32,000 nucleotides of DNA, taken from contig JADGIF010000021.1 of the NCBI GenBank assembly GCA_018985225.1, positions 1-32,000 of the forward strand, read 5' to 3'. Every line of letters starts with the position of its first letter. The first letter of the stretch is position 1. Positions 794 through 31,675 of the stretch are shown here, in pieces. The DNA comes from Amoeboradix gromovi X-113 (taxonomy: Eukaryota; Fungi; Sanchytriomycota). The position numbers were made by a program, and so were the translations under genes. The notes beneath the pieces are model-generated. The model did no database searches, was not told the DNA's origin, and saw only the letters and a list, made by a program, of their open reading frames with translations.

Positions 794-890
794 TTTGTGG
801 CAAGCAAAATACAAGCACTGGAAACAATGACGATACAATTGGTTTGCGATCAATTTATTTAGTATGAAATACGTACGACTTACCACAACC

Positions 891-8099: not shown

Positions 8100-8106
8100 A
8101 TTTACT
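8100..8106 (-). terminator. Candidate poly(A) signal AGTAAAT overlapping the SEC7 stop codon
   Basis: TGA GTAAAT; the same heptamer follows four other stops. Confidence 0.5.
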
Positions 8107-12173: not shown

Positions 12174-12189
12174 TGCACTAAAAATTAAT

Positions 12190-12772
12190 TTATTTTGGTA
12201 TAAAAGCAAGCAATTCTTCGACGGTCCATTGATCATAAATGTTCTTGCCGTAATGGATGGCTAAAACTTTACCAGTGCCTGTATCAATGATCGAATCCAT
12301 TGGTTTAGATTTATGACCATGATTATCACCCTTGCGTTTAAATTTTGAGACAAATTTCTTGCCTTGAGCTATGGCTTTAAGAATGCGAGGCGAAGGAATG
12401 GAAAATGAGCTAGCTTCCTTAGTTCCGAATAATTTATATAACGTCTTTTCCGGATCTCCAACAAAATTTAAGCCGCGAGACCATTCTTGTTCACCTTGAT
12501 TCTCCAGAATGATCTCCGGTTCTGAGTGTAGAACTATAATCTCTCGCAAGCCTGCTTTTTCAATCTCTGGCAACTTGTTCGCAATAAACCTCATGTGAAC
12601 CTTAATTAATTGTAAATACATTGCACAAGGGACAACCTGAAAATCGTCTTAGTTGAAAATGTACAAGCCCACTTCCTCCCTTTAACAGTATAACTTCATT
12701 TTTGATGGTTGTGATCCTGTCTATTGGGACAAACTCACCAACTTTAATTTGCGTCATAAATGTTTCACTCAT
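12190..12772 (-). CDS. AhpC/TSA-like (peroxiredoxin-like) thioredoxin-fold protein; exons 12772-12620 and 12600-12190
   Basis: Splicing the 19-nt intron gives RRFSGCPLCN|VHMR, an intact CxxC followed by its helix, then GDPEKTLYKLFG and IHYGKNIYDQWTVEELL. The start could be ATG 12772 or 12757. Confidence 0.82.
12601..12619 (-). other. 19-nt spliceosomal intron GTATTTACAATTAATTAAG (phase 0)
   Basis: GT-AG ends; removal joins two ORFs in different frames into one domain; TTAAT with A at -6. Confidence 0.88.
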
Positions 12773-14155
12773 ATCTGGTACTTCAAAATAAATAATCAAG
12801 CAATTTCAGATTGCGCTCTAATCAGATCGAGTCTAATTTAAGGTAATCCTCATTTCGTCATCAATTTCTGTAGACTGCATACTGGTTCAATGATTGCTCA
12901 CTGTAAAATATAGTGGCACCATTAATAACTTAACAAGGCTAAGTAAATATGCAGAAATTAGTCTGTTTTAAAACCGCAAGTCCTGTATTATCTCAGTTAC
13001 TCGATACTCAAACAAGAAACAAAATACATGAAACTTGGGAAGCTTCAAATACTTGATTAAGCTTTCATTACGTTCCACTGGTGTTTTATTTTTTACATTT
13101 ATAAACAAAATTATTTACAAGATTCGCTGGTGTATCAAATAGTAGACCATATTTTCCAACCTGAAGAAATTTCAGGTCCCAGAAATGGTCTATAGCGATT
13201 TCACTGGAAACTCTTTTCAAGTAACTGCTGCTTCTTTTTACCTCGACTAGTAATAAACTTGCACAATTTTTTCTATTCTGCACCCTAGTTTATGTTGTGA
13301 ATATTTGTTACTAACGATAGAGGTATAGTATTTTCTTTCTATAGCAGAAGTAGTCTTTTTGCAGATATTAGCTACATATTACATTGCATTTTTTATTTGG
13401 TAACTTCTCATTAAAGTCCTAATTTACCAGAAAATCAAGAATTTCCACAGAAGAAACTGACAAAGCCGGTGACTTCCCTTACAGTGGCTACTTACGCTTC
13501 AACTACCCGAGGCAAGATTGAATAAGCATGCATATACTTCAAGTGTATCTTACTTGTCAGCATATAGCCTCTGCCTGCTCTCAGAGAACAATTTGTACAC
13601 TTGTATCTCTCCAACTTGGTTATCTTCATACCTCCGCACATCTTGTGCATGTTTGGCTATTAAATGTTATATTACAGTACATCAATGTCTTTTTTTTAAA
13701 TTTAAAGGGCGGAAGAACTTAATAACGGTATATCTTTCTTGTCATTGAGATTCCTGTTCTTATGGCACTCGTGGAGTAGTTTCTAGGTCTGCAAGATTGT
13801 ATTCAGTACCTGCCAACAACATTTTTAAAATTCGGTATATTCAGGATCAGACGACTTGGAACCATTTGCATTGAAGAGAAGCAAGAATGTCGATTGCTAT
13901 GCAACTAGAATAATCTAGCGTGTGTGTATCGGAGCGTCACGGCTTCTATAATCACGATAAACGACTTATTCAGCAAAATGTAGAGCTAAAATAGCATGCA
14001 TCTGGACATTTAAGTCAATTGACAATACGAGGCAAAAAATGAAACCATACAAACATAGGTATGAACAGTAATTAAAATTCTGCCAAGATATTAACGTTTA
14101 TACAAGTAGAAATCAATTGTATTGGAATGCTTGTGATGTAAAATTCAGATTATCA

Positions 14156-14162
14156 ATTTACT
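14156..14162 (-). terminator. Candidate poly(A) signal AGTAAAT after PEX3
   Basis: TGA ACGTATTA AGTAAAT; this also supports 14171 as the true PEX3 end. Confidence 0.5.
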
Positions 14163-14170
14163 TAATACGT

Positions 14171-15193
14171 TCATCCTCTATATGCATCAAACGAAGTGTA
14201 TATGGATACAGTAAACATGTTCAATAAAGATGAGTTCTGTATTTGCTGGCAGTATACAGACTGTGGTTTATTTATTTGCTTACATTCTTTAACTATGAAC
14301 GGCAATAGTTTGGCAAATGGTAAGCAGTCTGCTTTAATGCTTGCAAAGTACACCTCCATTTGAGATTCTAATGCATTGAATGTAACATCAAATAGCTGCG
14401 ATAAAACGACATAAAAATCTTTGCTACATCAATAAGTAAGCCACCTATCTATAACATCATACAGCTCATTATTCAGCTGATGAATATTCACAATTGAGTC
14501 ATCCTTTAGCTCATTCAACTTTTCGCGACTTGGTAGGATTATTTGCTTGAACTCGTATATGTTCTGATGAACCTCAATACTTTCACGCATTTCCTGTATC
14601 AGCTTATGTAAATCTTTAATGGAAACCGCCTGATTCAGCTCCAAATCATCAACACGCTTTAATGCATTCTGAATGTTTAAATTTTTCCATCCCTCTTCAA
14701 ATACAAATTGAGACTTTTCCAAGAATACATTCTGACTCTTTTTATCTGTAAATTTAATTTTAGAGTCATTCAACTCGCCTACGCTCTGTAAATAAGTGTA
14801 CTTCCCAATAATATTCATCTGAACATGAACTAACAAACTAAGAGCACAAGTAGCGTATAATTTAATAAAAAGTTTTTCCATGCATTTCGACTTGAACAGT
14901 TTCCAAGCAGTCAACTTATCCACATAGTTTCCGTCAATTAAAACCTGTTGTGAATTTTTAAATTGGCTCAAAGATTGAAGATAAAGCTCTAAATCTATAT
15001 CATCTATAGTCATCATGGACAGTAACTGGTCAATTGTGAATTGAGAATCTTGCTTAAAGTGTTTGTACCTTCTGCTAATGTTGGCCTCATAATTGGTAGC
15101 TAGTAGTTCAGATTTCAGTTTGGTCTTTGTGTAGACTATTGCACCGTAAAGACATAGCGGAATCAAAATATAACGTTTTTTAAGAAACCACAT
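14171..15193 (-). CDS. PEX3: Peroxin-3; exons 15193-14445 and 14423-14171 (333 aa)
   Basis: N-terminal FLKKRYIL plus TM anchor; ANISRRYKHFKQDSQFTI, KLTAWKLFK, VQMNIIGKYTY. The spliced junction YDVIDSKDFYVVL matches the Pex3 D-x-x-E/D-S-x-D-F region, followed by LPFAKLLP. Confidence 0.85.
14424..14444 (-). other. 21-nt spliceosomal intron GTGGCTTACTTATTGATGTAG (phase 2, contains an in-frame TGA)
   Basis: GT-AG ends; removes the only stop between two same-frame Pex3 segments; TTGAT with A at -6. Confidence 0.82.
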
Positions 15194-15218
15194 TTTATCC
15201 TCTTGTTTTAAAGAGAAT

Positions 15219-15225
15219 ATTTACT
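15219..15225 (-). terminator. Candidate poly(A) signal AGTAAAT after GPN3
   Basis: TAA AATT AGTAAAT. Confidence 0.5.
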
Positions 15226-15229
15226 AATT

Positions 15230-15952
15230 TTAAGTTCTTTCCATAACCTCTTCGTACTCACCAAAACCTAGACATTGATCCATTGAAAGTATTAAATCCT
15301 CAATTGTCTCTTCATCTCTGTAATCAACTGGAATCCATTGTAAATCCACATGGTCCTGTAAAACGGTTGCCAGTTTTTGTGTGAAGGAATCTTTTGCTTC
15401 TGGAGTTTCTTCCATATACCTTCGGTACTCGGGTAATAAATCACATTTTGTAAGCACATTGAGATGTGGTAGTCCCATAAGCATCATACTACTTAGTGCA
15501 TTTAATTGAATACTCCAATAATGATGCGGACTTGTCAGATGGTGTGCCTCTGTTAAATGAACGACTAGTTGCTGATATCCCATTTGTTCAAGCAACTTAA
15601 CAAGTCTTGGCATTAGATTTAGATGTGTATATAGTTCGATTTGACCCGGACAGTCAACTATCAAAAAATCGTTTTCAAAGTTGAATTTCTCATGAATCCA
15701 ATCGGAGTTCTCTAACAAATACTCATAGCAATAAATCAATGCACCATTTGGCCCCAGTCCTAATTCCTCCATAACATCATCCACCCGAATCAGATCTCTA
15801 ATATCAACACTACATTGATAATCTATATTTTCTACTGCCGGATCCATATTAATAGCATGGCAGTATCTGGTTTTAAAGTATTCCATCATTTCCTTAACAA
15901 AAGTGGACTTTCCTGCACCTGCAGTTCCCACACAATAAATCAAATATTTCAT
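15230..15952 (-). CDS. GPN3: GPN-loop GTPase 3
   Basis: GTAGAGKST, NMDPA, GLGPNGALIYCYEYL, DCPGQIELYTH, HLNVLTKCDLL. Confidence 0.9.
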   Translation of the reverse strand: MKYLIYCVGTAGAGKSTFVKEMMEYFKTRYCHAINMDPAVENIDYQCSVDIRDLIRVDDVMEELGLGPNGALIYCYEYLLENSDWIHEKFNFENDFLIVDCPGQIELYTHLNLMPRLVKLLEQMGYQQLVVHLTEAHHLTSPHHYWSIQLNALSSMMLMGLPHLNVLTKCDLLPEYRRYMEETPEAKDSFTQKLATVLQDHVDLQWIPVDYRDEETIEDLILSMDQCLGFGEYEEVMERT

Positions 15953-15995
15953 TGTGTATCCGAACTAACCCCTCGTTACTCTTTTATTCTTCAAC

Positions 15996-17864
15996 ATGGA
16001 CCTCTTAAAATTGAACTGGGCATATAATGACAACATTAACAATAACGAAATTCATCTCAAGTGTCTAAAACTGCTAAAAGCTAGATCTTCAAGTCCCAAA
16101 GAATATCTGCTAGCCAAGAAGTATTTATTTGAGTTACAAGCCAACATTGGAAAATGGAAAATGAACTTTCTTGGCTATATACTAACATATATATTTAATA
16201 AAATGTATCTGCAAATCAATGTTATGGTGGAGAATATTGCAACGATTCAATCTATCAGGAAGCGACATCCGGTAATTTATATACCTTGTCATAAGTCTCA
16301 TTTTGACTATTTGCTTATACAATTTGCTATTGTAACTCTACATTTAGGCGTGCCTTTTATAGCAGCAGGCGAAAATCTTAATTTAACGGGTGTTGGTAGC
16401 TTACTGAAAGGAGGTGGTGCTTTTTTCATTAAACGGTCTTTTACCGATCCAATTCACAAATTAGTAACTTCTACCTATATTAATGTTCTGCTCCAAGGTA
16501 ACCACTGCATAGAATTCTTTATTGAAGGCACACGAAGTCGAACTGGCAAATTAAAAAGACCAAAGTATGGTTTACTTAAAATGATTTCATCAGAAATGAA
16601 GAGCGATGCTTACATAGTTCCAATTAGTATTACTTACGATAGGGTTGTGGAAACACCCTCATACGTAGACGAGTTATCAGGGTCTGAAAAACAGCAAGAA
16701 AGCATTTTATCACTAATAAAAAGTGTATCAGTGATAAATGAAAAGTATGGAAACATTAGCATCAGATTTGGGGAGCCATTCTCTATCAAATCATATTTGG
16801 CTACCAGCAACATTCAAACTTTAGCTTATGAGATACTTTACAGAATCAATGATCTAGCAGTTATTTCACCCTCTACATTGTTTGCCACAGCGCTATTAAC
16901 ACATAGCGGTAAAGGAGTAGGACTTCTGGAATTAACGAAAAGAATAGATTGGATAAAAGAGCGAGTTTTGGATAGAAATGGGTACATTAATGTGCATACA
17001 GCAGAAGAAATAATAAAGGACTCTCTAAATATCCTTAAAAACACTCTAGTGAAGGAGAAACATGGGTTATTAGAGCAGATCTATTATACAGATAGGAGAT
17101 ATGAACTGTCCTACTACAGAAACCAGTTGATCCATTTGTTTGTAAATGAATCCCTGGTATGCGCTGTTATACATGCTCATAAACGAAGGGATTTGCTCGT
17201 AAATGATTTATTGCAGGGAGTTTTGTACTTGTCTAGATTACTGAAATTTGAGTTTATTTTCAGATCAAATCCAATTAAAGACAATTTGATGGACACTTTG
17301 TCTAGGTTAGAAAGAGATGGTATAATTAGTAAGTTTGATGATACTTTGGTATGCTTGAAACCACTTGTAGGGTCTCCTCGGGAGAAATTTGAATTTTATT
17401 GCTTGTTGGTTTGGCCATTTATTGAGAGCTATTGGTTAGCTACTGTGTCTTTGTACTCATTATACCTCTATTACAAACATAAGAAGCATAACGAGAGTTG
17501 TTCCACTGCTAGATTTATGCAAATAAACATGGATATTGGAAGTACCCTGCACTATCAAGGCGATTTATTCTTCATGGAGTCGATTAACAAGGATAACATC
17601 TTCAATGCATGGGAATATTTGAGGCTGATATTGCCATTTACTTTCCAGAAAAACGAAGTGGCATTAAACTATGATATTGTTGTTGAAAATGGAAAAGCAA
17701 TCGAGCTTAATGATCCCATCGCCAGTAACTTTCCACAGGGAGCGCTGAGTGATGCGATAAATAGAAACAATATGTTTAGAATGAAGCCGCACACGACAAT
17801 GTGGAGATTGATTAGATGTTGTGAAATAGCATATTTGAGACTTTCTTCAGATGCCAAACTATAA
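15996..17864 (+). CDS. GNPAT: Glycerolipid acyltransferase of the GPAT/DHAPAT family, probably peroxisomal dihydroxyacetone-phosphate acyltransferase
   Basis: PCHKSHFDY (HxxxxD), FIAAGENL, GAFFIKRSF, FFIEGTRSRTGK, VPISITYDRVVE, LSYYRNQLIHLF; ends in -AKL (PTS1). Confidence 0.82.
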   Translation: MDLLKLNWAYNDNINNNEIHLKCLKLLKARSSSPKEYLLAKKYLFELQANIGKWKMNFLGYILTYIFNKMYLQINVMVENIATIQSIRKRHPVIYIPCHKSHFDYLLIQFAIVTLHLGVPFIAAGENLNLTGVGSLLKGGGAFFIKRSFTDPIHKLVTSTYINVLLQGNHCIEFFIEGTRSRTGKLKRPKYGLLKMISSEMKSDAYIVPISITYDRVVETPSYVDELSGSEKQQESILSLIKSVSVINEKYGNISIRFGEPFSIKSYLATSNIQTLAYEILYRINDLAVISPSTLFATALLTHSGKGVGLLELTKRIDWIKERVLDRNGYINVHTAEEIIKDSLNILKNTLVKEKHGLLEQIYYTDRRYELSYYRNQLIHLFVNESLVCAVIHAHKRRDLLVNDLLQGVLYLSRLLKFEFIFRSNPIKDNLMDTLSRLERDGIISKFDDTLVCLKPLVGSPREKFEFYCLLVWPFIESYWLATVSLYSLYLYYKHKKHNESCSTARFMQINMDIGSTLHYQGDLFFMESINKDNIFNAWEYLRLILPFTFQKNEVALNYDIVVENGKAIELNDPIASNFPQGALSDAINRNNMFRMKPHTTMWRLIRCCEIAYLRLSSDAKL

Positions 17865-18046
17865 GCGAACATACTGCAATTAAACTTTCCACTTCTCTAT
17901 ATTGTGCTAGTCATCTAAGTAATATAAATTATACTACTGGGACACCAAATATAAAAGCTAGACTAAGTTTTAAATTATAAAGTATTATTTATTTATCCTA
18001 GTAAAACATAATATATCTCTAAAATGTCTATAAGTTGGATGTAATA

Positions 18047-18499
18047 TCAACCTGCAGCTCTTTTTGCGATCACTTTAACTTTTCTGTCCTTGTTTTTTCG
18101 ATATTTTCGCTTTTTAGTTGGCTTTGAAGGACTAATAGTAATTCCCTCGAGTTTACTAAGTATATGCGCCTCGGATTGCAATTCTGCAGCTTCTTTAGGT
18201 AGCTGATGCGCAACTGAACCTTTTTCTTTGCAAATCTTGTAAAATTCGTCATCTTCAATGGTACCTTCTAGGTCGTTCTTTATTGGGACCTTGGTAATTT
18301 CACCCTGAAATAAGTTACAATCTAATCTACCTTCGTTCATTTTCTGCAACTCATTTACTAAGCTTCTTAGTTCATCTTTTGATGCGGTTGTAAAAAATAG
18401 ATTTTTACCATCTGTATATGTTGGATTTAAATGGGCGTACTTTTTAACATCAGTAACATCGTATAGCGTACATCTCTTCCGCTCCTGAAATGTTGACAT
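18047..18499 (-). CDS. Hypothetical protein (150 aa) with a basic, NLS-like C-terminal tail
   Basis: ATG-initiated ORF filling an otherwise empty gap, with protein-like composition and KPTKKRKYRKNKDRKVK; no family recognised. Confidence 0.6.
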   Translation of the reverse strand: MSTFQERKRCTLYDVTDVKKYAHLNPTYTDGKNLFFTTASKDELRSLVNELQKMNEGRLDCNLFQGEITKVPIKNDLEGTIEDDEFYKICKEKGSVAHQLPKEAAELQSEAHILSKLEGITISPSKPTKKRKYRKNKDRKVKVIAKRAAG

Positions 18500-18658
18500 T
18501 TCAAAATTGGTTTATGTTAGTTTCACTGGTCCCCCTATTGAAGGCAATCAAAATAGTTTACTTTTGCTTCCAAGAATTATAGAATCATTACATTTTACGG
18601 TCTTAACTAACTTCTTTTTTGTCATGACGGCTCATCGTTATTCCGGCTAGCTTGAAAC

Positions 18659-21600
18659 ATGAGGAATCTAGAGTTTAACGCTAGCTTTTTCTCCAGATGG
18701 ACTTTTTCCTGGATGGACCCAATTTTTAAACTTGGTTCCGCGTTAAATAATGAGAATTTCATGGAAATTAATGAAGCTGATAAATCGGAACCTCACTTTC
18801 ACATGTACTCCATATATAAATCCATGTTCCCTGATAGAGCTTTGTATAAGTATATTTTTAAAACTGTGAAATATTTACTGTATCAGCAATTACTATGCGG
18901 TGTATTTTATGCACTCTGCAGTGTTTTACCTTCTTATATGTTACATCAATTACTACAGGCCACATCGATACCGTCTCATATCTTTTATTTGTCTTTGATT
19001 GTGCTGTCATTAATAGCGACGTCTTTCCTTTTAAACCGCACAAATTACTGCGGAAACAAGCTAGTTATTCGAGTATATTCCATATTGCAATCTGATATAT
19101 TTGTGTCAACACTACAAAGAAAGCAATTTCAACTACCCCAACAAGGAGAATTGTTAAATTTTATAAATATCGATGTAAAGATCATTTCAGAGTTCATTCG
19201 CATTTCTTATTACTTGATTTCTGCTCCAATTCAAATTGTTACATGTACTCTTGTTTTATGCAATTTTTTGGGTGTTAGTGGTTTACTAATTATTGTCGTA
19301 TTAATCCTCACCGTACCAGTCCAAAAGTATATTATGAGTGTTGTAAGTAGACTGCAATCTAAGATTCTGTTTTACACTGATTCCAGAATATCAAAAACTA
19401 ATGAGTTACTGGTTGCTATCAAGTTAGTCAAGTTAAATGGATGGGAAGACTTGTTTTATAACAACATTAGAGATATAAGGAAACTAGAACTAATGGCTCT
19501 TTGCAAGTTCAAATGGATCATGGGTACTTTTGACTGCATATTTGGTCTAATTCCTATTTTATTACCGATAATGACTCTATTGATATATCTGCAATATAAT
19601 CCGTCATTGGATCCATCCATTGTATTCACGATGCTCTCTATTTTACAGTTGGTACAGTTCCCGATCAAAGACTATCCTGAAACAGCATTAAAATATTTTG
19701 AATTTCGGGTTTCAATTGAAAGATTACAGAGATATTTGAACACGGATTTGGATTGTAACAACAGCGTGATAAACTCTGATTTTATAGGGTTTAAACAGGC
19801 TAAAATGGGATACGTAAAACCAAAAACGCAACTATCAGCCAAAGATGAAATAAATCCCGATGATTTTGATTTTTTACTAGATGTAGGTTTTGTCATCCCG
19901 ACAGGCAGATTAACTGTAGTTCTCGGTAAGACCGGCTGTGGTAAGTCAATGTTACTACAATCCTTGTGTAATCAAGTACCTATTTATAGAGGGAAAGTTA
20001 GTATTGGTAATAACAAATCTGTAGGAATGGTACCCCAAATACCTTGGATGATGCATAAAAGCATCAAGGATAATATTATTTTAAACCATCCTTTTGAAGT
20101 GAATAAATATCACGCCATCTTAGAATTGTGCTGTTTGATAGAGGACTTGAACACATTTCCTAGCAAAGATGCTACTATACCCCAGTACTGTAGTGGCGGT
20201 CAGCTACAAAGGATTGCCTTGGCTCGCGTTTTGTATGCTGAACATGAAATGTATCTTTTTGACAATGTGTTGGCCTCTCTAGATAGTATAACTGCGAGTA
20301 TTATATTGAAAAATGTTATAATTAATACATTGAAGGAAACAACACGTGTCTTGACAGCTACTGATGCGCAATTAGTGCTACCTTTTGCGGACTACATTGT
20401 GATTCTAAAGGATGGTAAAAGTATCGTACATGGTACATTGCAACAAGTACAGGACAAACTAGCAGGATTTGACAAATATTTGTTGAATTCGTCACAACCC
20501 GAGGCCAACCCGGAGGGGCAGCCAGAAGCAAAAGTTCAACTGCTGCATACTTCACCAATAAAAGAAAAAGAAGAGAAAATGGCTGGAAAAATAAACAACA
20601 GTACATACCTCTTTTATATCTCGAGTATAGGAGGAGTTTTTATACTGTTTTTAATAATGTTTGGCGATTTTGCGCTACTAATTTTATCGTTTATGAGGGA
20701 TATGGTTTTAAAGCATTGGAGTATGGGTGCAGTAGGAGATTGGCTTCTTATGGCCAATTCAAATAGCGATATTAATGCATATTATACTTCTACATTTTTA
20801 GAGATTACATTCATTTTTATAATAATTAATCTGATAATTCAGTACTTTAAAGTGGTAATGGATATAAAGGGAGCGCTATATTTGCACAACACATTGTTGG
20901 ATAAAATATTGCATTGCGAGTTATTCTTGATTGGCAATGTCGGTACTGTACTGAACCGGTTTTCAAACGACATGCTGATTGTTGATAAACAAATGGCGAA
21001 CTCATTGTTTAGTGTGATCTTCTTTATAATAATGATTTCTAGTATTATGTTCTTTATTATGATTTATACTCCGTGGTTTGTGGTACCTTGTTTTTTGATA
21101 ATTTATGTTTATTATAAACTTAGCTTTTATTACTTAAACGCGACACGAGAGCTAAAGAGGCTAGAGAGCAGCTTTAGATCGCCCTTGATGACGATGATTC
21201 TCACCATGTTCAGCGGGAACAAATACATTCAGGTATATGGAATTGAGGGATATATAAAGCAGGATTTGTTAAATAGAGTTGACGATTGCAACAACTTGTT
21301 CTTTCAGCTGTCTGCGGCTAATAGATGGCTAAGTATAAGAAGTGACGTGATTGGAGGGATTATAGTGCTCTGCAGTGGACTAAGTTTAATAGGAATGGAT
21401 AAAGGTATCACAGGACTAATAATGACATATAGCTTGCAAATAACAAACTCACTGGTTTGGCTACTACAGCACAGAGGCAATTTGGAAATAAACAGTTGTG
21501 CTATAGAAAGAATACAAGAATATGTAAATATACAACAAGAACCCAAACTATTAAAAGAAACGGAAGTGCGTAGGGACTGGCCTTACAATGGGTCAATAAA

Positions 21601-22324: not shown

Positions 22325-22330
22325 GTAAAT
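22324..22330 (+). terminator. Candidate poly(A) signal AGTAAAT overlapping the ABCC stop codon
   Basis: TAA GTAAAT. Confidence 0.5.
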
Positions 22331-22352
22331 ATTATGTTAGTACTAAATTAAA

Positions 22353-23465
22353 TTATTTATTTAAGAGTAATGAGAGTGGAAGATCAATTAAAATGCTGTA
22401 ACACTCTCTAAACAGCTTTATATTCTTTACAGGTTCCACAAAATAGGGGCAAGCAAAAGTGAGAACAAAGTTACCAAATAACAGACCGAATACTTTTCCA
22501 AAAGACGAGTGCTTATTGACAATTGAAAAAACAAAATATTCAATTAGAACAGCAATTCCCTGAATTACAAAATATGTTAATGAAGAGGTACAAATTTGAT
22601 ATGAACAAACAAGAATCAAATAATCATGGAATACTCCTGATACTATAAAAGCAGATAAAGCAAACATTGATTTGGCCACTTTGGTAGAGCCCTTGTACAC
22701 ATTCTTTGGAACGAGAATGAAAATATCCCTTAAAATTGTATGCCACGATTCTGACCAAAAAGATGCTACGCTTTTAACCATAAAGGGCTTGTTAAAGAGC
22801 ATGTACGGTCTTTGATCACCAACTTCGTACGCTATTTCCAGCAGTAAAGAGTTAAGAGTCTTTTCTGGGATCAAAATTGATAACTTAAAACACAATTTGG
22901 ATACTAAAATAAATATTAGAGAGGAGATCAGAGTAAACAGTTGAATAGCAGTAGATATTAATATGCCATAGTAGAATGCGTAAATAAATCTAAACAGACA
23001 GTAGTACCACCCAGTCAAGAGATTGATTCTATTTAAGTTGAGGTCATTGGAGTGCTTTTGACCAACGACCAACAATGAGATCAGAAAGAGTGTATACTTA
23101 ACTAGCAGTGGAATTACTTCAGCTGGGCTAGAAAGATATTTAAAATTGTTTTCAATTTCGTACTTTTTATGCGGATCATACTGCTTCATTCGTAAATCCT
23201 TGATAGCATACATAACATTGCTAGAATAATTTTTAAAATTAATGTTAAACGATTTATAGCATTTCACGACAACAATCCAGTTCAGTATAGCGCCAAAATA
23301 GTTATTTCCCATAGTTGCATAAACATGAAAATATGGAACTACTAGCACTATCAACATAGCTATTGCCTTTGAAATTTTTGAAAAGTTGTGCATGTTGGCT
23401 CCAAACAACACTGTAATCAATACTAGCGCTATATCTCTGGATACATGAGTAATATCCAAATTCAT
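22353..23465 (-). CDS. Membrane-bound O-acyltransferase, wax-synthase/MBOAT_2 type
   Basis: Polytopic; FNKPF...SVASFWSESWH and AFIVSGVFHDY (catalytic His). Confidence 0.88.
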   Translation of the reverse strand: MNLDITHVSRDIALVLITVLFGANMHNFSKISKAIAMLIVLVVPYFHVYATMGNNYFGAILNWIVVVKCYKSFNINFKNYSSNVMYAIKDLRMKQYDPHKKYEIENNFKYLSSPAEVIPLLVKYTLFLISLLVVGQKHSNDLNLNRINLLTGWYYCLFRFIYAFYYGILISTAIQLFTLISSLIFILVSKLCFKLSILIPEKTLNSLLLEIAYEVGDQRPYMLFNKPFMVKSVASFWSESWHTILRDIFILVPKNVYKGSTKVAKSMFALSAFIVSGVFHDYLILVCSYQICTSSLTYFVIQGIAVLIEYFVFSIVNKHSSFGKVFGLLFGNFVLTFACPYFVEPVKNIKLFRECYSILIDLPLSLLLNK

Positions 23466-23612
23466 TCGGTTTCACCCTATAACATACCGATGCGGCCGTA
23501 TGAAATTGACATGAATGAAATCTTAGTTTTTCTGATCGTCTTTTACTTGAATTATATTAATACATCTTATAACAAGTGTTCTAAAATAAATCAAGGATAA
23601 AACATCAACAAA

Positions 23613-25152
23613 ATGGGAAAAAAGGTAGTTATTGTAGGATTAGGGGAAGCTGGAAAGAGTTGCTATAGAATATTAGCTCCCATAAAGGAACTAGAAGTTA
23701 AGCAGGTTAACCACATCATTAAAAGTATAGATACGGCAAAAAAAACTTTGCATTGTGATAAGATAAGTTATGAATATGACTTTTTAGTTCTCTGCACCGG
23801 TGCATCTCCTCGGGAGTTGGAAAAAAACCATCCTAACATAAAGACTACCCGCGATTTTAACTCTATCCAGCAACTAGCTGAAATTGCCAAATCCAGTAAC
23901 CGTATCGCTGTACTTGGAAATGGAGGTGTTTCATTGGAAGTCGTCAACGAATTTCGTAGCCTCGAACTTTTATGGATATTCAAGGACAGCCATATTGGAA
24001 AGGATTTCCTTGACGAGGATACTAGCAAGTATTTTTACCCCTACATTTTTAAAAAGAACATTCCCTGCAAGAACGACGTATGGGCCTATCTTAATAACGG
24101 TGATTCTCCAGATCTCTCTGCGAGCTCAATGGACAACAACATATCTGATAAAGCTAAGAAATTGGAAACCCCTTTGGGCCCTGCTCTTGGCCCTGTTTGG
24201 AAAGATAGCTTCAGACAATTTATTAAGGTGCATCATGAATTAGATAATTTCAGAGATATACGATTTGAACCTTCCACTACTCTGGATGATATTTTGAGTT
24301 CTAAAGCAGCCAGAGATGTATATAATGATGCAGTCGTCTCAAAAGATACCATTAATGCCTTTGCAGAATCCGATCAGGCAACCGGGTGGGAAATGAATGA
24401 CATAATTAATTTTCAAGTGCCACCATCTAAGATTAAACATTTAAAGCAATTAAAGAAAAGTGATGCGAAATTTGAAGAGTATCCGCTGTTCTTGAAGTTA
24501 AAGAATGGCAATGTATATGGAGTTGACTATCTGATATGCGGTCTTGGTGTAGTGCCAAATACCTCCTTTATTAAAGCATCTGATAAGATCAAATTAAGCG
24601 AGGAAGGAGGCATAATTGTAGATAATACCATGAAATCATCAATTGATTCAATATATGCAGCAGGTGATGTGGCTACAATAATGCCAATACAGCACAACTT
24701 CATCCAAAAGAGACTGTGGTCTCAAGCAAGAGTCATGGGAATTGCAGCTGCACAATCGATAATACAGTCCGTGGATATAAAGTATACAATTTCGAAGAGC
24801 GTAACATCACTTATACACTTTTGCATGCTTCCCGCACTAAGCTCAGCGATGATAACGCGCTATTTCAACAATTTTGTGCATGTTACATCTTTTTTTGGAT
24901 TACGTGCTGTATTCCTGGGCAAATATAATGGACAAGGTCTAAAGTACACTACGGAGTTCTATAGCGCTGGTAACGGACTGGTCAAATATGTCAAAATGGA
25001 TGGAAAAGTCAGGGGTGCCATACTAATTGGTGAGACAGGAATGGAGGTATCAATAATTAACTTAGGACTACATTGAGAACTTGGTAATAACAGGTACAGA
25101 TACTGTAATATTCGATTTCTCGGCAAACGATGTGGATTTGTTTGGGGAATAG
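23613..25152 (+). CDS. PYROXD1: Pyridine nucleotide-disulfide oxidoreductase domain protein 1; exons 23613-25046 and 25066-25152 (506 aa)
   Basis: LCTGASP, IAVLGNGGVSLE, ALGPVW, IYAAGDV, QKRLWSQAR, HVTSFFG..VFLGKYNGQGL. The spliced end GAILIGETGME|DYIENLVI matches the family GETDLEETFENLIL. Confidence 0.9.
25047..25065 (+). other. 19-nt spliceosomal intron GTATCAATAATTAACTTAG (phase 0)
   Basis: GT-AG ends; restores the conserved C-terminus; TTAAC with A at -6. Confidence 0.9.
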
Positions 25153-25178
25153 CCAAAAGTGTTAATAAATCAGTTTAT

Positions 25179-25850
25179 TTAGAAAAGATTTTTGACTTTA
25201 AAAGCCTCAATTTGATTCATTAGCATCCTATTTTGATCAACCAGCACCTGCGTAAGATGTACAAGTTCTATCGTATAAGTTTCTAATCTCTTGTTTTCAT
25301 CCAAGGTAGCAGCCAAAGAGTTTGATATTTTAGACTTGAAGTTTGATTTCATTAATTCCACAGCGTCTTGTAGCTTGCAAGATAACTGCTCATTCAAATC
25401 ACGTTTTATGATCAAATGTGATTTTTCAAGAGCAAATAGTTCATGTTTTGACTTGACACTTAGATCGGCTATCTGGTTTTCAAGGCTGGAGATCTGGAGT
25501 TGATATTGAGACTGCAGTTCAATGGCAATGTTTGCAGACTGTATTTTATTATCCATTTCTTGCACAGCCTGATTTGTAGATGATTGTAATAGACAAATTT
25601 GATTTTCATGACTAGACTCCAACTCTACTAGGCTTCTGGAGGAGAATTCTATAATTTGTTCTTTTTCTTGAATGGTTTTTGATAAAAAAGCATTATCAGT
25701 CGATAGCAATCTTATCTTTTCCTCCAATTCAGTTACCACAAATTCTGTCGTCTGAATCGATGCTGCATATTTACGGGTTAGCTCCAATATCTGTAGCTCC
25801 AGGACTCGGATAGTAGATTGCATCAGAATTATGTTTTTGTCAGTTTCCAT
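25179..25850 (-). CDS. Coiled-coil protein, possibly CFAP157/BBOF1-like (cilium or basal body)
   Basis: All-helical 223-aa ORF. The segment FALEKSHLIIKRDL...ATLDENKRL...VLVDQNRML follows the LEK...EN...EN register I recall for CFAP157/BBOF1, but coiled-coil similarity is weak evidence. Confidence 0.5.
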   Translation of the reverse strand: METDKNIILMQSTIRVLELQILELTRKYAASIQTTEFVVTELEEKIRLLSTDNAFLSKTIQEKEQIIEFSSRSLVELESSHENQICLLQSSTNQAVQEMDNKIQSANIAIELQSQYQLQISSLENQIADLSVKSKHELFALEKSHLIIKRDLNEQLSCKLQDAVELMKSNFKSKISNSLAATLDENKRLETYTIELVHLTQVLVDQNRMLMNQIEAFKVKNLF

Positions 25851-25871
25851 TTATTTTCAATTTTTGAGACA

Positions 25872-26123
25872 ATGGAAATTGTACTTCTTGATGACCTAAA
25901 AGATTTAACGCTTTTAGAATTTCAGGGTGATTTTACTAAATATAAAGGCACTGTAACTATTACAGATGATGTGATTAAGGTTGGAAATCAGACCATAAAA
26001 GAGAAATCTCAAGAAAATCCAAAGTTCTTGTATAGAATAAACAAAGAAACTTTAGAAATTACAGGAAAAGTTGGACTGCATCGAAAGTTTACTGAAAGAC
26101 CGCATTTAAATTTTAAAATTTAG
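25872..26123 (+). CDS. CTF8: Chromosome transmission fidelity protein 8 (Ctf18-RFC subunit), 83 aa
   Basis: LLEFQG, VG-N/H-Q and terminal KF..RP are characteristic of Ctf8; first ATG is at 25872. Confidence 0.7.
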   Translation: MEIVLLDDLKDLTLLEFQGDFTKYKGTVTITDDVIKVGNQTIKEKSQENPKFLYRINKETLEITGKVGLHRKFTERPHLNFKI

Positions 26124-26127
26124 TTTA

Positions 26128-26724
26128 TTAAAATCCGTACTTTGATAATTCCGCTTGAAGTTTCTTCACTTTTTCGTTTGTCTTTACACTTTGCTTCTTT
26201 TTTAATTGAGCAGCATACCAAGCAGCATCTCTAGTCTTACGTTTAGCTTCAAGCTTATCTACGACAGCTCCATACTTCCATCCAACAGTGTTAGCTAGTT
26301 CACCAACAGTACAAAACTTTCGGTTTTGTCGTAATCTAAGTTGACGATAAGCCTGAGGTACAATCATTTTTTTGAGAACTTGATATTTTGGAGGAATTCC
26401 TTCAACAACAGTTAATCTAGATAATGCTTGCTCACCTCTTTTGGTAAATCGAGGGACCATACCTCTAACTGCCTTATGGAAGATTTTGGAAGGTGCGCGG
26501 AAGTGGAACGGTCCTTTCTTTGGGTTAACTAGACATCTTTTTCTCAAATAATGAGAATGTAACAGCTTGTTTCTAGCTAGTGATCCACTAATGCACAAAT
26601 CTTCACATCTGACAACTACAATGTCCTGTCCTTCCAATAAATGTTTTGCAGTGATAGATGCTAATCTTCCCATCATATGATCTTTACCGTCAATAATGAC
26701 TACCTTTTCAAAAGTATTAACCAT
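26128..26724 (-). CDS. RPL13A: 60S ribosomal protein uL13 (L13a/L16), intronless
   Basis: IDGKDHMMGRLAS, VVVRCE, NPKKGPFHFRAPSKIF, EGIPPKY, VGWKY. Confidence 0.98.
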   Translation of the reverse strand: MVNTFEKVVIIDGKDHMMGRLASITAKHLLEGQDIVVVRCEDLCISGSLARNKLLHSHYLRKRCLVNPKKGPFHFRAPSKIFHKAVRGMVPRFTKRGEQALSRLTVVEGIPPKYQVLKKMIVPQAYRQLRLRQNRKFCTVGELANTVGWKYGAVVDKLEAKRKTRDAAWYAAQLKKKQSVKTNEKVKKLQAELSKYGF

Positions 26725-27208
26725 TTATGAGTCATAGAATTGTCCAACATGACAAAATCTACACGTGTTGTAAGAATTATGACCAATCAAAATTCAACAC
26801 AAATAACCTACAAGGAGTTTTTAAATCACTGCAGCGTTTGAGACAAGCAGTAAGAAACTAACCTCATTCCGTTGAATAGAGGTTTTGATTGATGCAGATA
26901 ATGGTGTCACTAAGGGATCGTTACACCAAAGCTCATATCTTGCCATTCAGCTTTCTTGTTAGTTCTGCAATAACTTTTTACAACTTGTTCGATTTTTGGG
27001 TCTTTCATAAAGAATAGGAACATCAATGTTCGTAAGGTGTTTCGATGGTATTCGATTGTAAATTAACTATTTTGAGTATCTCGCTCTCAAGACACGATGC
27101 CTATTAACTAGTCTGTTTCTAGTTCTATTTAACAAAAAGTATTTGTTCACAAATTGTTTGAGTACCGATGAGGTCAAAAATGTCATTTGATGTCCCATTT
27201 ATTAAATT

Positions 27209-28225
27209 CTAAATAGCTTTCAAGCGACTTAAGTACGTTTGCAATTTTAGTATTTTACCAGCCAAGGGACTTTTAGAATCGATTTGTACTGACGAGTCCT
27301 TTTGTGAATCATTATTAGATGATAAAGGTGCACGAGAATGCGAACGAGATCGCGACAATCTATCCCACCAGGGAACTGCTCTACCGCTTGATTCTGATGA
27401 TTTTCCTGAGAATTTTGAGTAGACATCGCTTGAATACCCGTGTCTTAGTTTTACACTTTTCGAATCTTCCCGGTTTAAGAATCTTTGTCGCAACATATAG
27501 GCTTTATTTTGACGAGGCATGGCGATCGAAGAGGTGGATCGGCTGTTTCCTCTTCTTTTAGCTTTTTTCTCTAGTCTCTTATTTGAGATAACAACTGTCA
27601 ACTCCTCGATTTCTTTTTTTCTATCATGCAAATCACTCTTCTGTTTCTTGAGCTTAGCGTCCTTTGCTTCAGTTTCTTTCCAATAATTTTCAAACAATGC
27701 TAGATTTAATAACTGTAACCTTTTTGCTTCTTTCTTTCCTAATTCCAAGTCTCCACTTGTTATATGTGTTATTAGTAGACTGGATATATCTCGTATCTCC
27801 AATTGCAAATCCTTCATATTTGCGGGAATTTCAGTTTTAATTGCATTTCGTATGTCAAAATCTACTCTAATTAATGGCAAAGGATAGTAAACCTTTTTGT
27901 GGTTATTTACAAAAACTAAGAAGATTTTGTCTTCGTTCTCAACTTGTTGTGTATCCAAAGACCGCAATGATTTGCCTCCAATTAACTTGTATTTATCTTC
28001 TTCCTTGATAATGTAGAGTGCCTCCCTGTTTAGTTGCGTTAACTCTATCATTCCATTGAACTCATCCAAGTCCATCCACTCGCCACACTTTGCACTCATC
28101 TTTTGTATGAACCCATTGGAGAATCTATTAGACCACTCTCTACCATTAATCTCTATTTTTATATCAATCAGCTCTTCAATTATCACTGCTGTCATAAACA
28201 CATTTTTGTGAATTTGAAATCTCAT
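27209..28225 (-). CDS. CCDC61: CCDC61/VFL3-like centriolar protein (SAS-6/XRCC4-like head, coiled coil, basic Ser/Arg-rich tail)
   Basis: WSNRFSNGFIQKMSAKCG...F..M resembles the CCDC61 W.GEF...FIE.LT.KTG...F..F..ML pattern; KIFLVF....KVYYPLPL resembles KRYLIL....RIHYPLPL. Confidence 0.72.
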   Translation of the reverse strand: MRFQIHKNVFMTAVIIEELIDIKIEINGREWSNRFSNGFIQKMSAKCGEWMDLDEFNGMIELTQLNREALYIIKEEDKYKLIGGKSLRSLDTQQVENEDKIFLVFVNNHKKVYYPLPLIRVDFDIRNAIKTEIPANMKDLQLEIRDISSLLITHITSGDLELGKKEAKRLQLLNLALFENYWKETEAKDAKLKKQKSDLHDRKKEIEELTVVISNKRLEKKAKRRGNSRSTSSIAMPRQNKAYMLRQRFLNREDSKSVKLRHGYSSDVYSKFSGKSSESSGRAVPWWDRLSRSRSHSRAPLSSNNDSQKDSSVQIDSKSPLAGKILKLQTYLSRLKAI

Positions 28226-28246
28226 TGGCCTTGTAAAATTTAAAAG

Positions 28247-29864
28247 TTAATTATTTTTTATTGTCAAGTTTAGTTGCTTTTCCATTTCTTCTATACTCAC
28301 CAACCCATCTTTATCAAGATCAAATTTATCAATTAATATTTCAGCATCGTTATCTTCTACAGGGTGTCTTATTGTCTTCAAAGCTACCCTCAAGTCATCA
28401 ATAGTAATTTGCCCTTTAGGGTTAGGCTTTACCAAGTTCAATGATGATCCTACCTGTGAGTCTAACTGAGTTATCTCCTCACTTATTTTATCAATTAAGC
28501 TATTAATTGGTGTCTCTTTTGTCTCTTTATTCTCTACAATGTCTTGTAGGAGCTGCTTTTCTTCCTCTACAATACTTACATTCATCATTACACGTAATAC
28601 CGAGGCCAATTCATTTTTTTGATCCACGGTCAATTCACCCTAAATAAGATTAAATTACCTGTGCTGCGCTTTCCTTTTCCACTTGTTTCTTTAGCTCATC
28701 TTGCTGTCTAGCCTCCTTTTCTTTTTCGATTTCTACCATCTCCTCCTGAACTGCTGCTAAAATTACGTCCTTCTCGCCTCGCCCTCGAGCCATGTCTAGC
28801 ATTGTTTCTTTTATCACAGTATCTGGCAGAGATTTTAAAGTATCCTTTAAGACATTCAATGTTTCTTCTGATAGCCCAGAAGCGTTTATACTTTGTTCAA
28901 CTGTTTTGTTGGAGTCCTTGAATTGCATATCTACCATTAAAATGCGACTTAGGACGAGTAGAATGTTTGGCACATTGTAAACACCAGATAGTTCAACCCA
29001 CTGTTTTAATTCTAATCTCATTCTACGCGGTGAAGAAACCGGGATACCTCGTTCTTTGCAAAGAGTCTGCAGCTCGTGTATTGGGATATCTGAAATAACA
29101 GGCATTAAAGAAGCTGGGGACTCTGGAACATCAGAACTTGGAGTAGATGCAGGTTGATCAATTCTAATCGCATCTTGAAGAATTAGCCCATCTTCAAGTC
29201 TAATCTTGTTAATATGTCTAGCAACATTCCTACGAATCATATCGTTGGTACCAATACCTGGAATGGTAAAATATCTACAAATACTAATCAGCTGTTGGCG
29301 ACTTAAATGGTCCAAAGTGACATTATCCTTGAATTTCTGACATAACTTTAATAAATCAGGAGTAGCCACAATAGCAGATTCATCTTGCTGCGATTTAGGC
29401 TGCATATTATTTAATAAATTAACAAACGTACCCAACTCACCTTTGTCTTTCTCTTCCAGAGTTTCTCTCAAAAAACTAGCGACTTTAAGACGGACACCAA
29501 GTAGCTTTTTTCTGTTTTCCTGTTCTTTGAATTCGTCCCTAAAGGTAGAAGGCAGAAAATTCGGAAATATTTTTATCACAACAGGCAATAAAAACTCCAT
29601 AAATGGAACAATTAGGAAGACAGAAAACGGTACGATCCTAAGTAGATCGCTAGTAGTTCTTTTCAGTTGTCTGTGCTCTCTGTGAGTTAAAGGTTGACCG
29701 CTTAGAGTTTGTCGCAAAAGTCTGGATGATATTTTGGTTTCTGCAACTAGAAGTTTGGATCCGGTCCAGAAATGATTTGCTTCGTGCTTAACCCGCTGCC
29801 ATATTGTGGGATTTACAGCTGGCTTGATGTTAAACCGAATGGCAGTACTTCCCAATCGAAACAT
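28247..29864 (-). CDS. LETM1: LETM1/Mdm38 mitochondrial inner-membrane protein with C-terminal EF-hands; exons 29864-28659 and 28639-28247 (about 532 aa)
   Basis: HEANHFWTGSKLL, LTHREHRQLKRTTSDLLRIVPFSVFLIVPFMEFLLPV, FPNFLPSTF, TLDHLSRQQL, ELQTLCKERG; exon 2 carries the EF-hand DLDKDGLVSIEE. First ATG 29864 gives a presequence-like start, MFRLGSTAIRF. Confidence 0.93.
28640..28658 (-). other. 19-nt spliceosomal intron GTAATTTAATCTTATTTAG (phase 0)
   Basis: CAG|GTAAT donor and TTTAG|G acceptor; joins the LETM1 domain to the EF-hand ORF; CTTAT with A at -6. Confidence 0.9.
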
Positions 29865-29918
29865 TCTAGCTCCTAGCAATATTAATCAAAAGGAGTAACT
29901 GCCGTAACTTGTTGCAAA

Positions 29919-30438
29919 ATGTCATTATTCCAACAAGATTTGATTTCTAAAGATATCGCAATGCCAGAGGGATATGTAATACGCCCATTGCATCTCGAGG
30001 ATTTTCACAAAGGATTCTTGGATTGTTTAAAAGGTTTAACAATGGTTGGAAATGTCACTTTTGATGAGTTCACTTTCAGATTTAGAGAACTGAATCACGA
30101 TTACTATATCGTCGTTATTGAAGACCTAAATAATCGCAGAATTGTTGGTGCTGGTACTATGATGGTTGAAATGAAATTTATTCGACACTGTGGAAAAGTT
30201 GGACACATTGAAGATATCGTAGTGGATGAAAGCCAACGTGGTAAAAGGTTCGGTTTAAAGATTATTGAGCAGCTAAAACATTTAGCTGTCAATTCCGGTT
30301 GCTATAAAGTATTTTCGTTTAATCTAGGTTATTTTGGATTGCGCTGAGCACAATTTGACGTTCTATGAGAAGTGCGGATTAAAAAAGAAAGAAGTTCAGA
30401 TGGTTTTGTATTTTCCTCAGAACGAGCCTAAAAGTTAG
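29919..30438 (+). CDS. GNA1: Glucosamine-6-phosphate N-acetyltransferase; exons 29919-30308 and 30328-30438 (166 aa)
   Basis: IRPLHLEDFHKGFLDCLKGLT, EMKFIRHCGKVGHIEDIVV. The spliced GCYK|VILDCAEHNLTFYEKCG is the canonical Gna1 C-terminal motif. Confidence 0.96.
30309..30327 (+). other. 19-nt spliceosomal intron GTATTTTCGTTTAATCTAG (phase 0)
   Basis: Removal restores CYKVILDC exactly, with no extra or missing residue; TTAAT with A at -6. Confidence 0.94.
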
Positions 30439-31167: not shown

Positions 31168-31675
31168 CTAAAAGGCGCATAGGCCCAGCAATCGAGTTTT
31201 GAATAAAGGGTTCTTGTTACGTGGAAGCTGCTCTTTGCCGCATTTCAACAGACTATGCAATACATTGGAATCATAAACGATCAAGGTCAGTGGGCTTTAT
31301 AAAATGAATGCTTAAAAAGGAAACTAGCGATCAACTGGGTTACCGTGAGTAGAGCTTTGTAATAGTACAGGACGCTTCATGTTATTCCTATTATTAGATG
31401 TTGTAAAACCAGCAAGATATCTTTTCGATGAGTCTGGCAGTAGACTTAAATAGTTACTGCTGAATTTCCGCCATTTCAGAAACTCCTGAGGCACTGAAAG
31501 AGAAACGCAGTCGTTTCGCTGCAAAATTAATTCGATTAAGGAACGTAGCATCATTATTTCTTATGATAGAGTAAAATGAAGATCGAATGTATTCCTAAGT
31601 TAAGGCTCTGACTATACCACTAGATAATCATGGCTGGTGGATTAAGCTGCACTGCGTCAAGGCTCACTGATTTCG

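What the first reader, a model, noticed from the sequence alone, without database searches (positions are those of the whole stretch)
12601..30327. Ultra-short (19-21 nt) spliceosomal introns of near-uniform length in a fungus-like nuclear genome
Seen: five conserved genes are interrupted, and each is repaired exactly by one tiny GT-AG segment. They are 12601-12619(-) GTATTTACAATTAATTAAG, 14424-14444(-) GTGGCTTACTTATTGATGTAG, 25047-25065(+) GTATCAATAATTAACTTAG, 28640-28658(-) GTAATTTAATCTTATTTAG and 30309-30327(+) GTATTTTCGTTTAATCTAG. Four are exactly 19 nt, and no longer intron is needed anywhere in the window. Known: introns this small are recorded from heterotrich ciliates (15-16 nt) and chlorarachniophyte nucleomorphs (about 18-21 nt); microsporidian and Paramecium introns are usually somewhat longer and typical fungal introns much longer. 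Inference: this lineage independently evolved a minimal-intron splicing system. Default gene finders, whose minimum intron length is often 20 nt or more, would mis-annotate these genes as truncated. I cannot tell whether this has been published for the organism.
Basis: partly seen in the sequence, partly recalled or inferred. Interest (0 to 1): 0.92.

Follow-up and report, generated by a model that had tools for sequence, protein, structure and literature searches.

The report
Nineteen-base introns in a sanchytrid fungus
Five genes of an alga-parasitising fungus (very probably Amoeboradix gromovi) are each interrupted by an intron of only 19-21 bases, shorter than the fungal introns in the papers I could search, and these introns sit mostly near the ends of genes, the reverse of the usual pattern in intron-poor genomes.

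Summary
All five GT-AG segments are at the stated coordinates, and each restores one open frame. The genome is a sanchytrid fungus, very probably Amoeboradix gromovi.

Evidence:
(1) Two related species lack exactly these bases in the peroxiredoxin-like gene and GNA1, giving intact 187- and 166-aa proteins.
(2) Orthologous introns in relatives keep position, ends and branch A, while the interior diverges and length switches between 19 and 21.
(3) Ascomycete-like GNA1 genes have 57- and 83-nt introns at the same site.
(4) A genome-wide motif peaks at 19 nt (331 matches; 25-37 at 17, 18 and 26 nt).
(5) U2, U6 and Prp8 are present.

No RNA data exist, so splicing is inferred. New here: 18 of 20 sampled introns lie in the last 30% of the coding sequence (P about 1e-8, small sample); intron-poor genomes are usually 5'-biased. 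I estimate about 1,300 introns (800-2,000). The published ORF-only proteomes are truncated at these sites. Tiny introns are known in ciliates, mikrocytids, nucleomorphs and myxozoans; I found no report for sanchytrids. This scan already reported the intron class on other contigs of this genome; my look-ups found no note of the 3' bias.

The parts
12601..12619 (-). 19-nt phase-0 intron in an AhpC/TSA-2 (peroxiredoxin-like) gene; predicted branch A at 12606
   Evidence: The ortholog in L025/L026 lacks exactly 19 nt here and is an intact 187-aa ORF: exon 1 ends at its residue 51 and exon 2 covers 52-187
12620..12772 (-). Exon 1 of the peroxiredoxin-like gene (51 codons, CxxC motif)
12190..12600 (-). 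Exon 2 of the peroxiredoxin-like gene (136 codons)
   Evidence: Weak Pfam AhpC-TSA_2 hit, below cut-off
14424..14444 (-). 21-nt phase-2 intron in PEX3, with an in-frame stop; predicted branch A at 14429
   Evidence: Same site has 21 nt in L025/L026 and 19 nt in L027/L028
14445..15193 (-). PEX3 exon 1
   Evidence: Pfam Peroxin-3 positions 160-336
14171..14423 (-). PEX3 exon 2
   Evidence: Weak Peroxin-3 hit to profile positions 367-458; 76-79% identity among relatives
25047..25065 (+). 19-nt phase-0 intron in PYROXD1; predicted branch A at 25060
   Evidence: Same site has 21 nt in L002/L003 and 19 nt in L004. 91 of 97 homolog motif matches continue directly into the xxxEN motif that exon 2 supplies
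23613..25046 (+). PYROXD1 exon 1 (478 codons)
25066..25152 (+). PYROXD1 exon 2 (28 codons)
28640..28658 (-). 19-nt phase-0 intron in LETM1/Mdm38; predicted branch A at 28645
   Evidence: Same site has 19 nt in L002/L003, and the acceptor is conserved in L004
28659..29864 (-). LETM1 exon 1 (LETM1 RBD domain)
28247..28639 (-). LETM1 exon 2 (EF-hand domain)
30309..30327 (+). 19-nt phase-0 intron in GNA1; predicted branch A at 30322
   Evidence: 21 nt in L002/L003. Intron-less 166-aa ortholog P0131 equals 130+36 codons. 57- and 83-nt introns at the same site in two ascomycete-like loci
29919..30308 (+). GNA1 exon 1 (130 codons, ends at GCYK)
30328..30438 (+). GNA1 exon 2 (36 codons, begins VILDC)

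Best explanation
These are ordinary major-spliceosome (U2-type) introns that shrank to a fixed minimum in the sanchytrid lineage. Shown in DNA: a 5' site GTA-W-T-T (usually without the +5 G), a fungal-type branch motif (C/T)TAAY with its A six bases from the end, and a (T)AG three bases after it, with no pyrimidine tract. Length varies only between the 5' site and the branch, with a hard floor at 19 nt. Inferred: U1/U6 and U2 bind almost edge to edge, giving a 14-nt lariat loop with a 5-nt tail, and the fixed branch-to-AG spacing selects the acceptor. Deletion pressure erodes length until both snRNA helices can no longer be fitted. At least one intron (GNA1) occupies a position shared with ascomycete-like genes, so it is probably an old intron that shrank. 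Precise intron loss is still going on among sanchytrids. Most introns were lost, and the survivors concentrate near the 3' end of genes (median about 74 codons from the stop). The cause of that bias is not established. My preferred inference is that tiny introns are spliced well mainly as last introns, helped by 3'-end processing, so 5' and internal ones were purged. A close rival is that cDNA-mediated loss spares introns with little downstream homology.
For: Frame restoration. Intron-less orthologs matching the predicted splice to the base. Conserved position, ends and branch A, with diverged interiors and 19/21 length switching, in two further species. All 14 introns located by homology rather than by my motif filter (5 window, 9 in relatives, one of these only by its 3' end) have T at -8, A at -6 and Y at -5. 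Same-site 57- and 83-nt GT-AG introns in ascomycete-like GNA1. Genome-wide length peak with a sharp lower edge. U6 full length with ACAGAGA box, U2 full length, Prp8 in a 2233-aa open frame, weak U1 candidate. All five 21-nt introns examined carry an in-frame stop. 3' bias: 18 of 20 in the last 30% against 27% expected from a simulation of scanner sensitivity, P = 8e-9; 14 of 15 outside the window. A motif-only scan agrees: 11 of 17 hits at ORF ends, 2 before ORFs.
Against: No RNA run holds this sequence, so excision, efficiency and lariats are not shown. The branch A is assigned from sequence alone. The positional sample is 20 candidates in 155 kb (1.5% of the genome), 15 of them not confirmed by homology. 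5'-UTR introns, stop-free 3n introns and introns splitting the ATG are invisible to my scan. Ancestral position is shown for one intron only. The GNA1 site is empty in Blastocladiella and Rhizophlyctis and the PYROXD1 site in Trichinella, so parallel gain is not excluded. The U1 hit is below Rfam's cut-off.
Confidence: 0.93

Rival explanations
1. The frame breaks are assembly or amplification indels, and the GT-AG segments are chance fits.
For: The genome comes from whole-genome amplification of single sporangia. The only DNA run is probably the same data.
Against: Independent metagenome assemblies of other species have segments at the same sites. Orthologs lack exactly the segment. The length peak is genome-wide.
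Confidence: 0.01
2. The segments are real but mostly unspliced relics: transcripts retain them and the cell relies on truncated proteins, frameshifting or read-through, as with poorly spliced short microsporidian introns.
For: E. cuniculi short introns are spliced below 20% on average. A 3' position makes the unspliced product nearly full length.
Against: Second exons stay conserved in frame across species (75-79% identity for LETM1 and PEX3 exon 2) and carry conserved C-termini. Splice signals are conserved while interiors drift. The required frame change differs between orthologs (19 vs 21 nt), which splicing tolerates and a fixed frameshift would not. Partial retention remains likely.
Confidence: 0.04
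3. The segments are removed by a non-spliceosomal route, such as Ire1-type cleavage and ligation of short HAC1-like introns (own knowledge) or DNA-level excision.
For: Similar size to unconventional HAC1 introns in some fungi (own knowledge, not tested).
Against: Invariant GT/AG ends, a fungal branch consensus, a site shared with normal 57- and 83-nt introns, spliceosome genes present. The re-assembled DNA contig shows no excised form (contigs cannot prove absence).
Confidence: 0.01
4. On origin only: the introns are mostly a recent gained family (introner-like or repair-derived) inserted preferentially near 3' ends, not shrunken old introns.
For: Presence and absence differ among close relatives. 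Two tested sites are absent from some outgroups.
Against: No shared interior sequence among the introns. The one repeated 19-mer reads through as coding in the copy examined. The GNA1 site is shared with ascomycete-like genes. With the tree, the Sec7 and GNA1 differences are best read as losses.
Confidence: 0.2

Closest known systems
Chlorarachniophyte nucleomorph introns (Bigelowiella natans, 18-21 bp; PMC6009652)
   Same: Nearly the same size range, AT-rich, GT-AG.
   Different: Nucleomorph introns have no discernible branch A and number 3.1 per gene. Here there is a clear (C/T)TAAY motif at a fixed place, about 0.2 introns per gene, and an ordinary nucleus.
Heterotrich ciliate introns (Stentor coeruleus 15-16 nt, PMC9505925; Fabrea salina, PMC13685798)
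   Same: Branch A followed by a 5-nt tail, GTAWTT-like 5' site, conserved U6 ACAGAGA, about a fifth of genes with introns. Fabrea salina also shows extreme 3' enrichment through loss of 5' introns.
   Different: Lariat loop of 14 nt or more here against 10-11 nt; modal length not a multiple of three; Stentor is 5'-biased; unrelated lineage.
Mikrocytid introns (Mikrocytos mackini, 16-17 nt; PMC10245619)
   Same: Parasite with a very narrow intron size class.
   Different: Shorter, 224 in all, sequence highly conserved, strongly reduced spliceosome; rhizarian.
Microsporidian short introns (Encephalitozoon cuniculi, about 25 nt; PMC6349667)
   Same: Fungal-side parasite with short GT-AG introns.
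   Different: Longer, a few dozen per genome, the original set directly after the ATG of ribosomal protein genes. Here about 19 nt, roughly a thousand or more, 3'-biased.
Myxobolid and dicyemid introns (median 22-27 bp; PMC13644364)
   Same: Convergent shortening in parasites, validated by conserved positions.
   Different: Animals, longer. That 2026 paper lists ciliates, microsporidia and dicyemids as earlier exceptions, not sanchytrids, in the part I read.

Membership tests
U2-type (major) spliceosomal introns | GT..AG termini | tested here: met
   All five window introns and all orthologs
U2-type (major) spliceosomal introns | Branch-site consensus able to pair with U2 | tested here: met
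   T-8, A-6, Y-5 in 14 of 14 homology-defined introns; C at -9 in 13 of 20 sampled. Sequence only; the U2 sequence itself was not read
U2-type (major) spliceosomal introns | Removal restores the conserved protein | tested here: met
   Exon-wise match to intron-less orthologs and homologs
U2-type (major) spliceosomal introns | Major spliceosome core (U2, U6, Prp8) encoded in the genome | tested here: met
   U2 102 bits, U6 65 bits, Prp8 domain E 6.5e-81. U4, U5 and other proteins not tested
U2-type (major) spliceosomal introns | Canonical U1 snRNA | tested here: inconclusive
   One full-length hit, 37.8 bits, below the 69.5 cut-off
U2-type (major) spliceosomal introns | Excision from transcripts through a lariat | not testable with these tools
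   No RNA run holds the sequence
Ultra-short uniform intron class (heterotrich, mikrocytid, nucleomorph type) | Narrow size class under about 25 nt with a sharp floor | tested here: met
   Counts by length
Ultra-short uniform intron class (heterotrich, mikrocytid, nucleomorph type) | Longer introns absent genome-wide | tested here: inconclusive
   No excess at 26 nt. A few unverified 26-32-nt candidates in 155 kb. Long introns were not surveyed
Intron-poor genomes with 5'-biased introns (yeast, microsporidia, Stentor) | 5' positional bias | tested here: not met
   18 of 20 in the last 30% of the coding sequence
Introner-like mobile introns | Many sequence-similar copies at unrelated sites | tested here: not met
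   Interiors differ; the only repeated 19-mer is in an open frame in the copy examined

The most novel reading that the evidence does not exclude
Sanchytrids are a whole fungal phylum whose introns, on the order of a thousand or more per genome, have collapsed to 19-22 nt and survive almost only as last introns near the stop codon, because a standard-looking spliceosome can remove such tiny introns efficiently only when coupled to 3'-end formation. This would make them the shortest introns on the fungal side of the tree and a natural test of how intron position and minimal size are linked.
Probability: 0.3. Interest if true: 0.82.

Novelty: new variant of a known kind. Interest (0 to 1): 0.67.

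Why it matters
It adds an independent origin of minimal introns, in fungi outside microsporidia and below the microsporidian size reported in the papers I read. These introns keep a readable branch motif, which lets one measure the smallest 5'-site-to-branch distance (branch A at position 14) that a fungal spliceosome accepts. The 3' concentration contradicts the usual expectation for intron-poor genomes, which rests on reverse-transcription loss; the one precedent I found is Fabrea salina. In practice, the published sanchytrid proteomes were called as uninterrupted ORFs, so perhaps a sixth of the proteins have wrong C-termini or are split. That affects gene-loss and domain claims for this phylum.

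Tried and rejected
RNA evidence: the single run search returned one DNA run only; laying it showed no indels and no skip joints at the introns.

I did not try to obtain more DNA another way; later genome searches asked for no loci and returned counts and matches only.

The joined-protein search was left out.

Introner idea for a repeated 19-mer: rejected, since it lies in an open frame.

Ancestral position: negative for GNA1 in Blastocladiella and Rhizophlyctis and for PYROXD1 in Trichinella. A JGI sequence with GT at the PYROXD1 site looked mis-assembled and was not counted.

Other: one Pfam call failed on my frame slip. Rfam found no RNA genes in the window. The Stentor genome paper was not held. 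Three searches for sanchytrid plus intron or splicing terms found no report; one hit was read and was irrelevant.
Full report
Observation. All five segments are in the window at the stated places, four of 19 nt and one of 21 nt, all GT..AG. Frame arithmetic done exon by exon shows one phase per site that links two long open frames, while retention stops translation within 2-12 codons. The genes are an AhpC/TSA-2 peroxiredoxin-like protein, PEX3, PYROXD1, LETM1/Mdm38 and GNA1.

Organism. The assembly has 10,549,678 bases in 1319 contigs and the window is about 36% GC. Its uL13 is 80% identical to that of Sanchytrium tribonematis and at most about 60% to other named eukaryotes, and the two group with three environmental sequences at 100/100 support. 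Galindo et al. 2021 (PMC8371127) give 10.5 Mb and 36.27% GC for Amoeboradix gromovi, with 1167 contigs, and called proteins with TransDecoder on genomic contigs; the word intron occurs only in a reference title. So the window is very probably A. gromovi, and its annotation could not model introns.

Comparative proof. Metagenome contigs gave syntenic loci from two related species: A (uL13 91%, L002/L003; GPN3 87%, L025/L026) and B (83%, L004; 77%, L027/L028) (pairing of loci into species is inferred from identity, GC and sample). PYROXD1, LETM1, GNA1 and PEX3 have tiny GT..AG segments at the same codon positions, with diverged interiors and lengths switching between 19 and 21. Two orthologs act as natural cDNAs. 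Species A's peroxiredoxin-like gene lacks exactly 19 bases and encodes 187 aa, with window exon 1 ending at residue 51 and exon 2 matching 52-187. A relative's GNA1 is an uninterrupted 166 aa, equal to 130+36. Conversely, Sec7 is intact in the window but carries a 20-nt intron in both A and B, a precise loss in the window's lineage given the tree. S. tribonematis GNA1 and PYROXD1 in EukProt break off just after the same sites, so the trait probably spans both described genera (inferred from protein only). Two ascomycete-like metagenome loci have 57- and 83-nt introns at exactly the GNA1 site, which points to an old intron that shrank. Blastocladiella and Rhizophlyctis lack it.

Genome-wide class. 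A strict motif (GTA, spacer, WTAAYNTAG) occurs 25, 37, 331, 167, 77, 48 and 25 times at 17, 18, 19, 20, 21, 22 and 26 nt. About 14% of the 19-nt hits are one repeat that reads as coding. The floor at 19 is sharp. An ORF-aware scan of 154.6 kb found 20 candidates of 19-22 nt (13, 4, 2 and 1) and only scattered ones at other lengths. Scaling gives about 1,300 introns (rough range 800-2,000), or about 0.2 per gene, somewhat above this scan's earlier estimates of 500-1,000.

Anatomy and mechanism. The 5' site is GTA-W-T-T, mostly without G at +5. The 3' end is (C/T)TAAY-N-TAG with the putative branch A at -6. The -8, -6 and -5 positions were part of my scan filter, but they also hold in all 14 introns located by homology. 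In a 19-mer the branch A is base 14, giving a 14-nt lariat loop and a 5-nt tail; Stentor has the same tail and a 10-11-nt loop (PMC9505925). U6 with its ACAGAGA box, U2 and a 2233-aa Prp8 frame are present; U1 is a weak candidate. All five 21-nt introns checked contain an in-frame stop, as expected if retained forms must be degradable. I infer standard two-step splicing by the major spliceosome, with the acceptor set by fixed distance from the branch and the size floor set by the footprints of the U6 and U2 helices. None of this is shown at RNA level: no RNA run exists.

Positional bias. Four of the five window introns, and 18 of all 20 candidates, lie in the last 30% of the coding sequence. 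Simulated insertions show the scanner is 93-96% sensitive in the first nine tenths of a gene and 63% in the last tenth, so 27% were expected (P = 8e-9; 14 of 15 outside the window, P = 1.5e-7). The median distance to the stop is about 74 codons in genes of 130 to over 1,100 codons. A motif-only scan gives the same picture, and three of four further introns in the relatives are also 3'. Intron-poor genomes are normally 5'-biased (PMC532390; Stentor; E. cuniculi). The ciliate Fabrea salina is a published exception caused by loss of 5' introns (PMC13685798). The sample is small and blind to UTR introns and stop-free 3n introns. The cause is open: coupling of splicing to 3'-end formation, or cDNA-mediated loss that spares introns with short downstream flanks. 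PMC532390 found loss lower at 3' ends in filamentous fungi. The only 5'-located window intron is the one missing in the closest relative, which is suggestive but a single case.

Comparison and novelty. These work like, and by every feature I could test are, U2-type spliceosomal introns. The ultra-short uniform class is known from nucleomorphs (18-21 bp, no visible branch A), heterotrichs (15-16 nt), mikrocytids (16-17 nt), myxobolids and dicyemids and microsporidia (about 25 nt). I found no paper reporting it for sanchytrids; the library lacks most subscription journals. This scan had reached the same basic conclusion on other contigs of this genome. Verdict: real, a new variant of a known kind, interest 0.67.

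Noticed in passing
window 8106-12236 (-); L025:9890-9909, L027:5989-6008: The Sec7/BIG gene is uninterrupted in the window but has a 20-nt intron at the same site in both relatives: a precise intron loss.
   Followed up: yes
L022:87-105 and about 14% of the genome-wide 19-nt motif hits: One 19-mer recurs on many contigs. In the copy examined it reads through in an open frame, so it is probably part of a multicopy coding element; the element was not identified.
   Followed up: partly
window 12800-14170: About 1.4 kb without a long ORF or repeats between PEX3 and the peroxiredoxin-like gene; species A has only about 100 bases here. Possible insertion or decayed gene.
   Followed up: partly
window 26727-27209: 480-base intergenic stretch (115 bases in species A). 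A second, deeper Logan contig matches 26993-27034 and 27166-27187, suggesting a repeated element. No Rfam hit, no internal repeat.
   Followed up: partly
window 17915-17934 (-): A 20-nt intron-like motif about 110 bases downstream of the ORF at 18047-18499 (-): a possible 3'-UTR intron or a chance match.
   Followed up: no
window 864-2102 and 2277-3515 (+): Two tandem, similar 412-aa genes with hydrophobic N-terminal segments and a C-terminal RGS domain (Pfam hit for the first).
   Followed up: partly
window 8106-31167 vs L002-L004, L025-L028 and S. tribonematis NODE_41: Gene order is largely conserved across uncultured relatives, and four of the same genes share one S. tribonematis contig. 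The two ENA metagenomes hold at least two undescribed sanchytrid species usable for comparative work.
   Followed up: partly
L029:3600-3618: A 19-nt intron-like segment joins two gelsolin-domain ORFs in a relative, here in the first half of the gene.
   Followed up: partly
G000:C978:1695-1852 (-): Divergent U1 snRNA candidate. Its 5' end may have co-evolved with the +5 T of the donor sites; sequence not read.
   Followed up: no
L021:2176-2205 (-), L020:3343-3368 (+), window 31295-31324 (-): A few 26-30-nt GT-AG candidates at ORF ends; either chance or rare longer introns, unverified.
   Followed up: no
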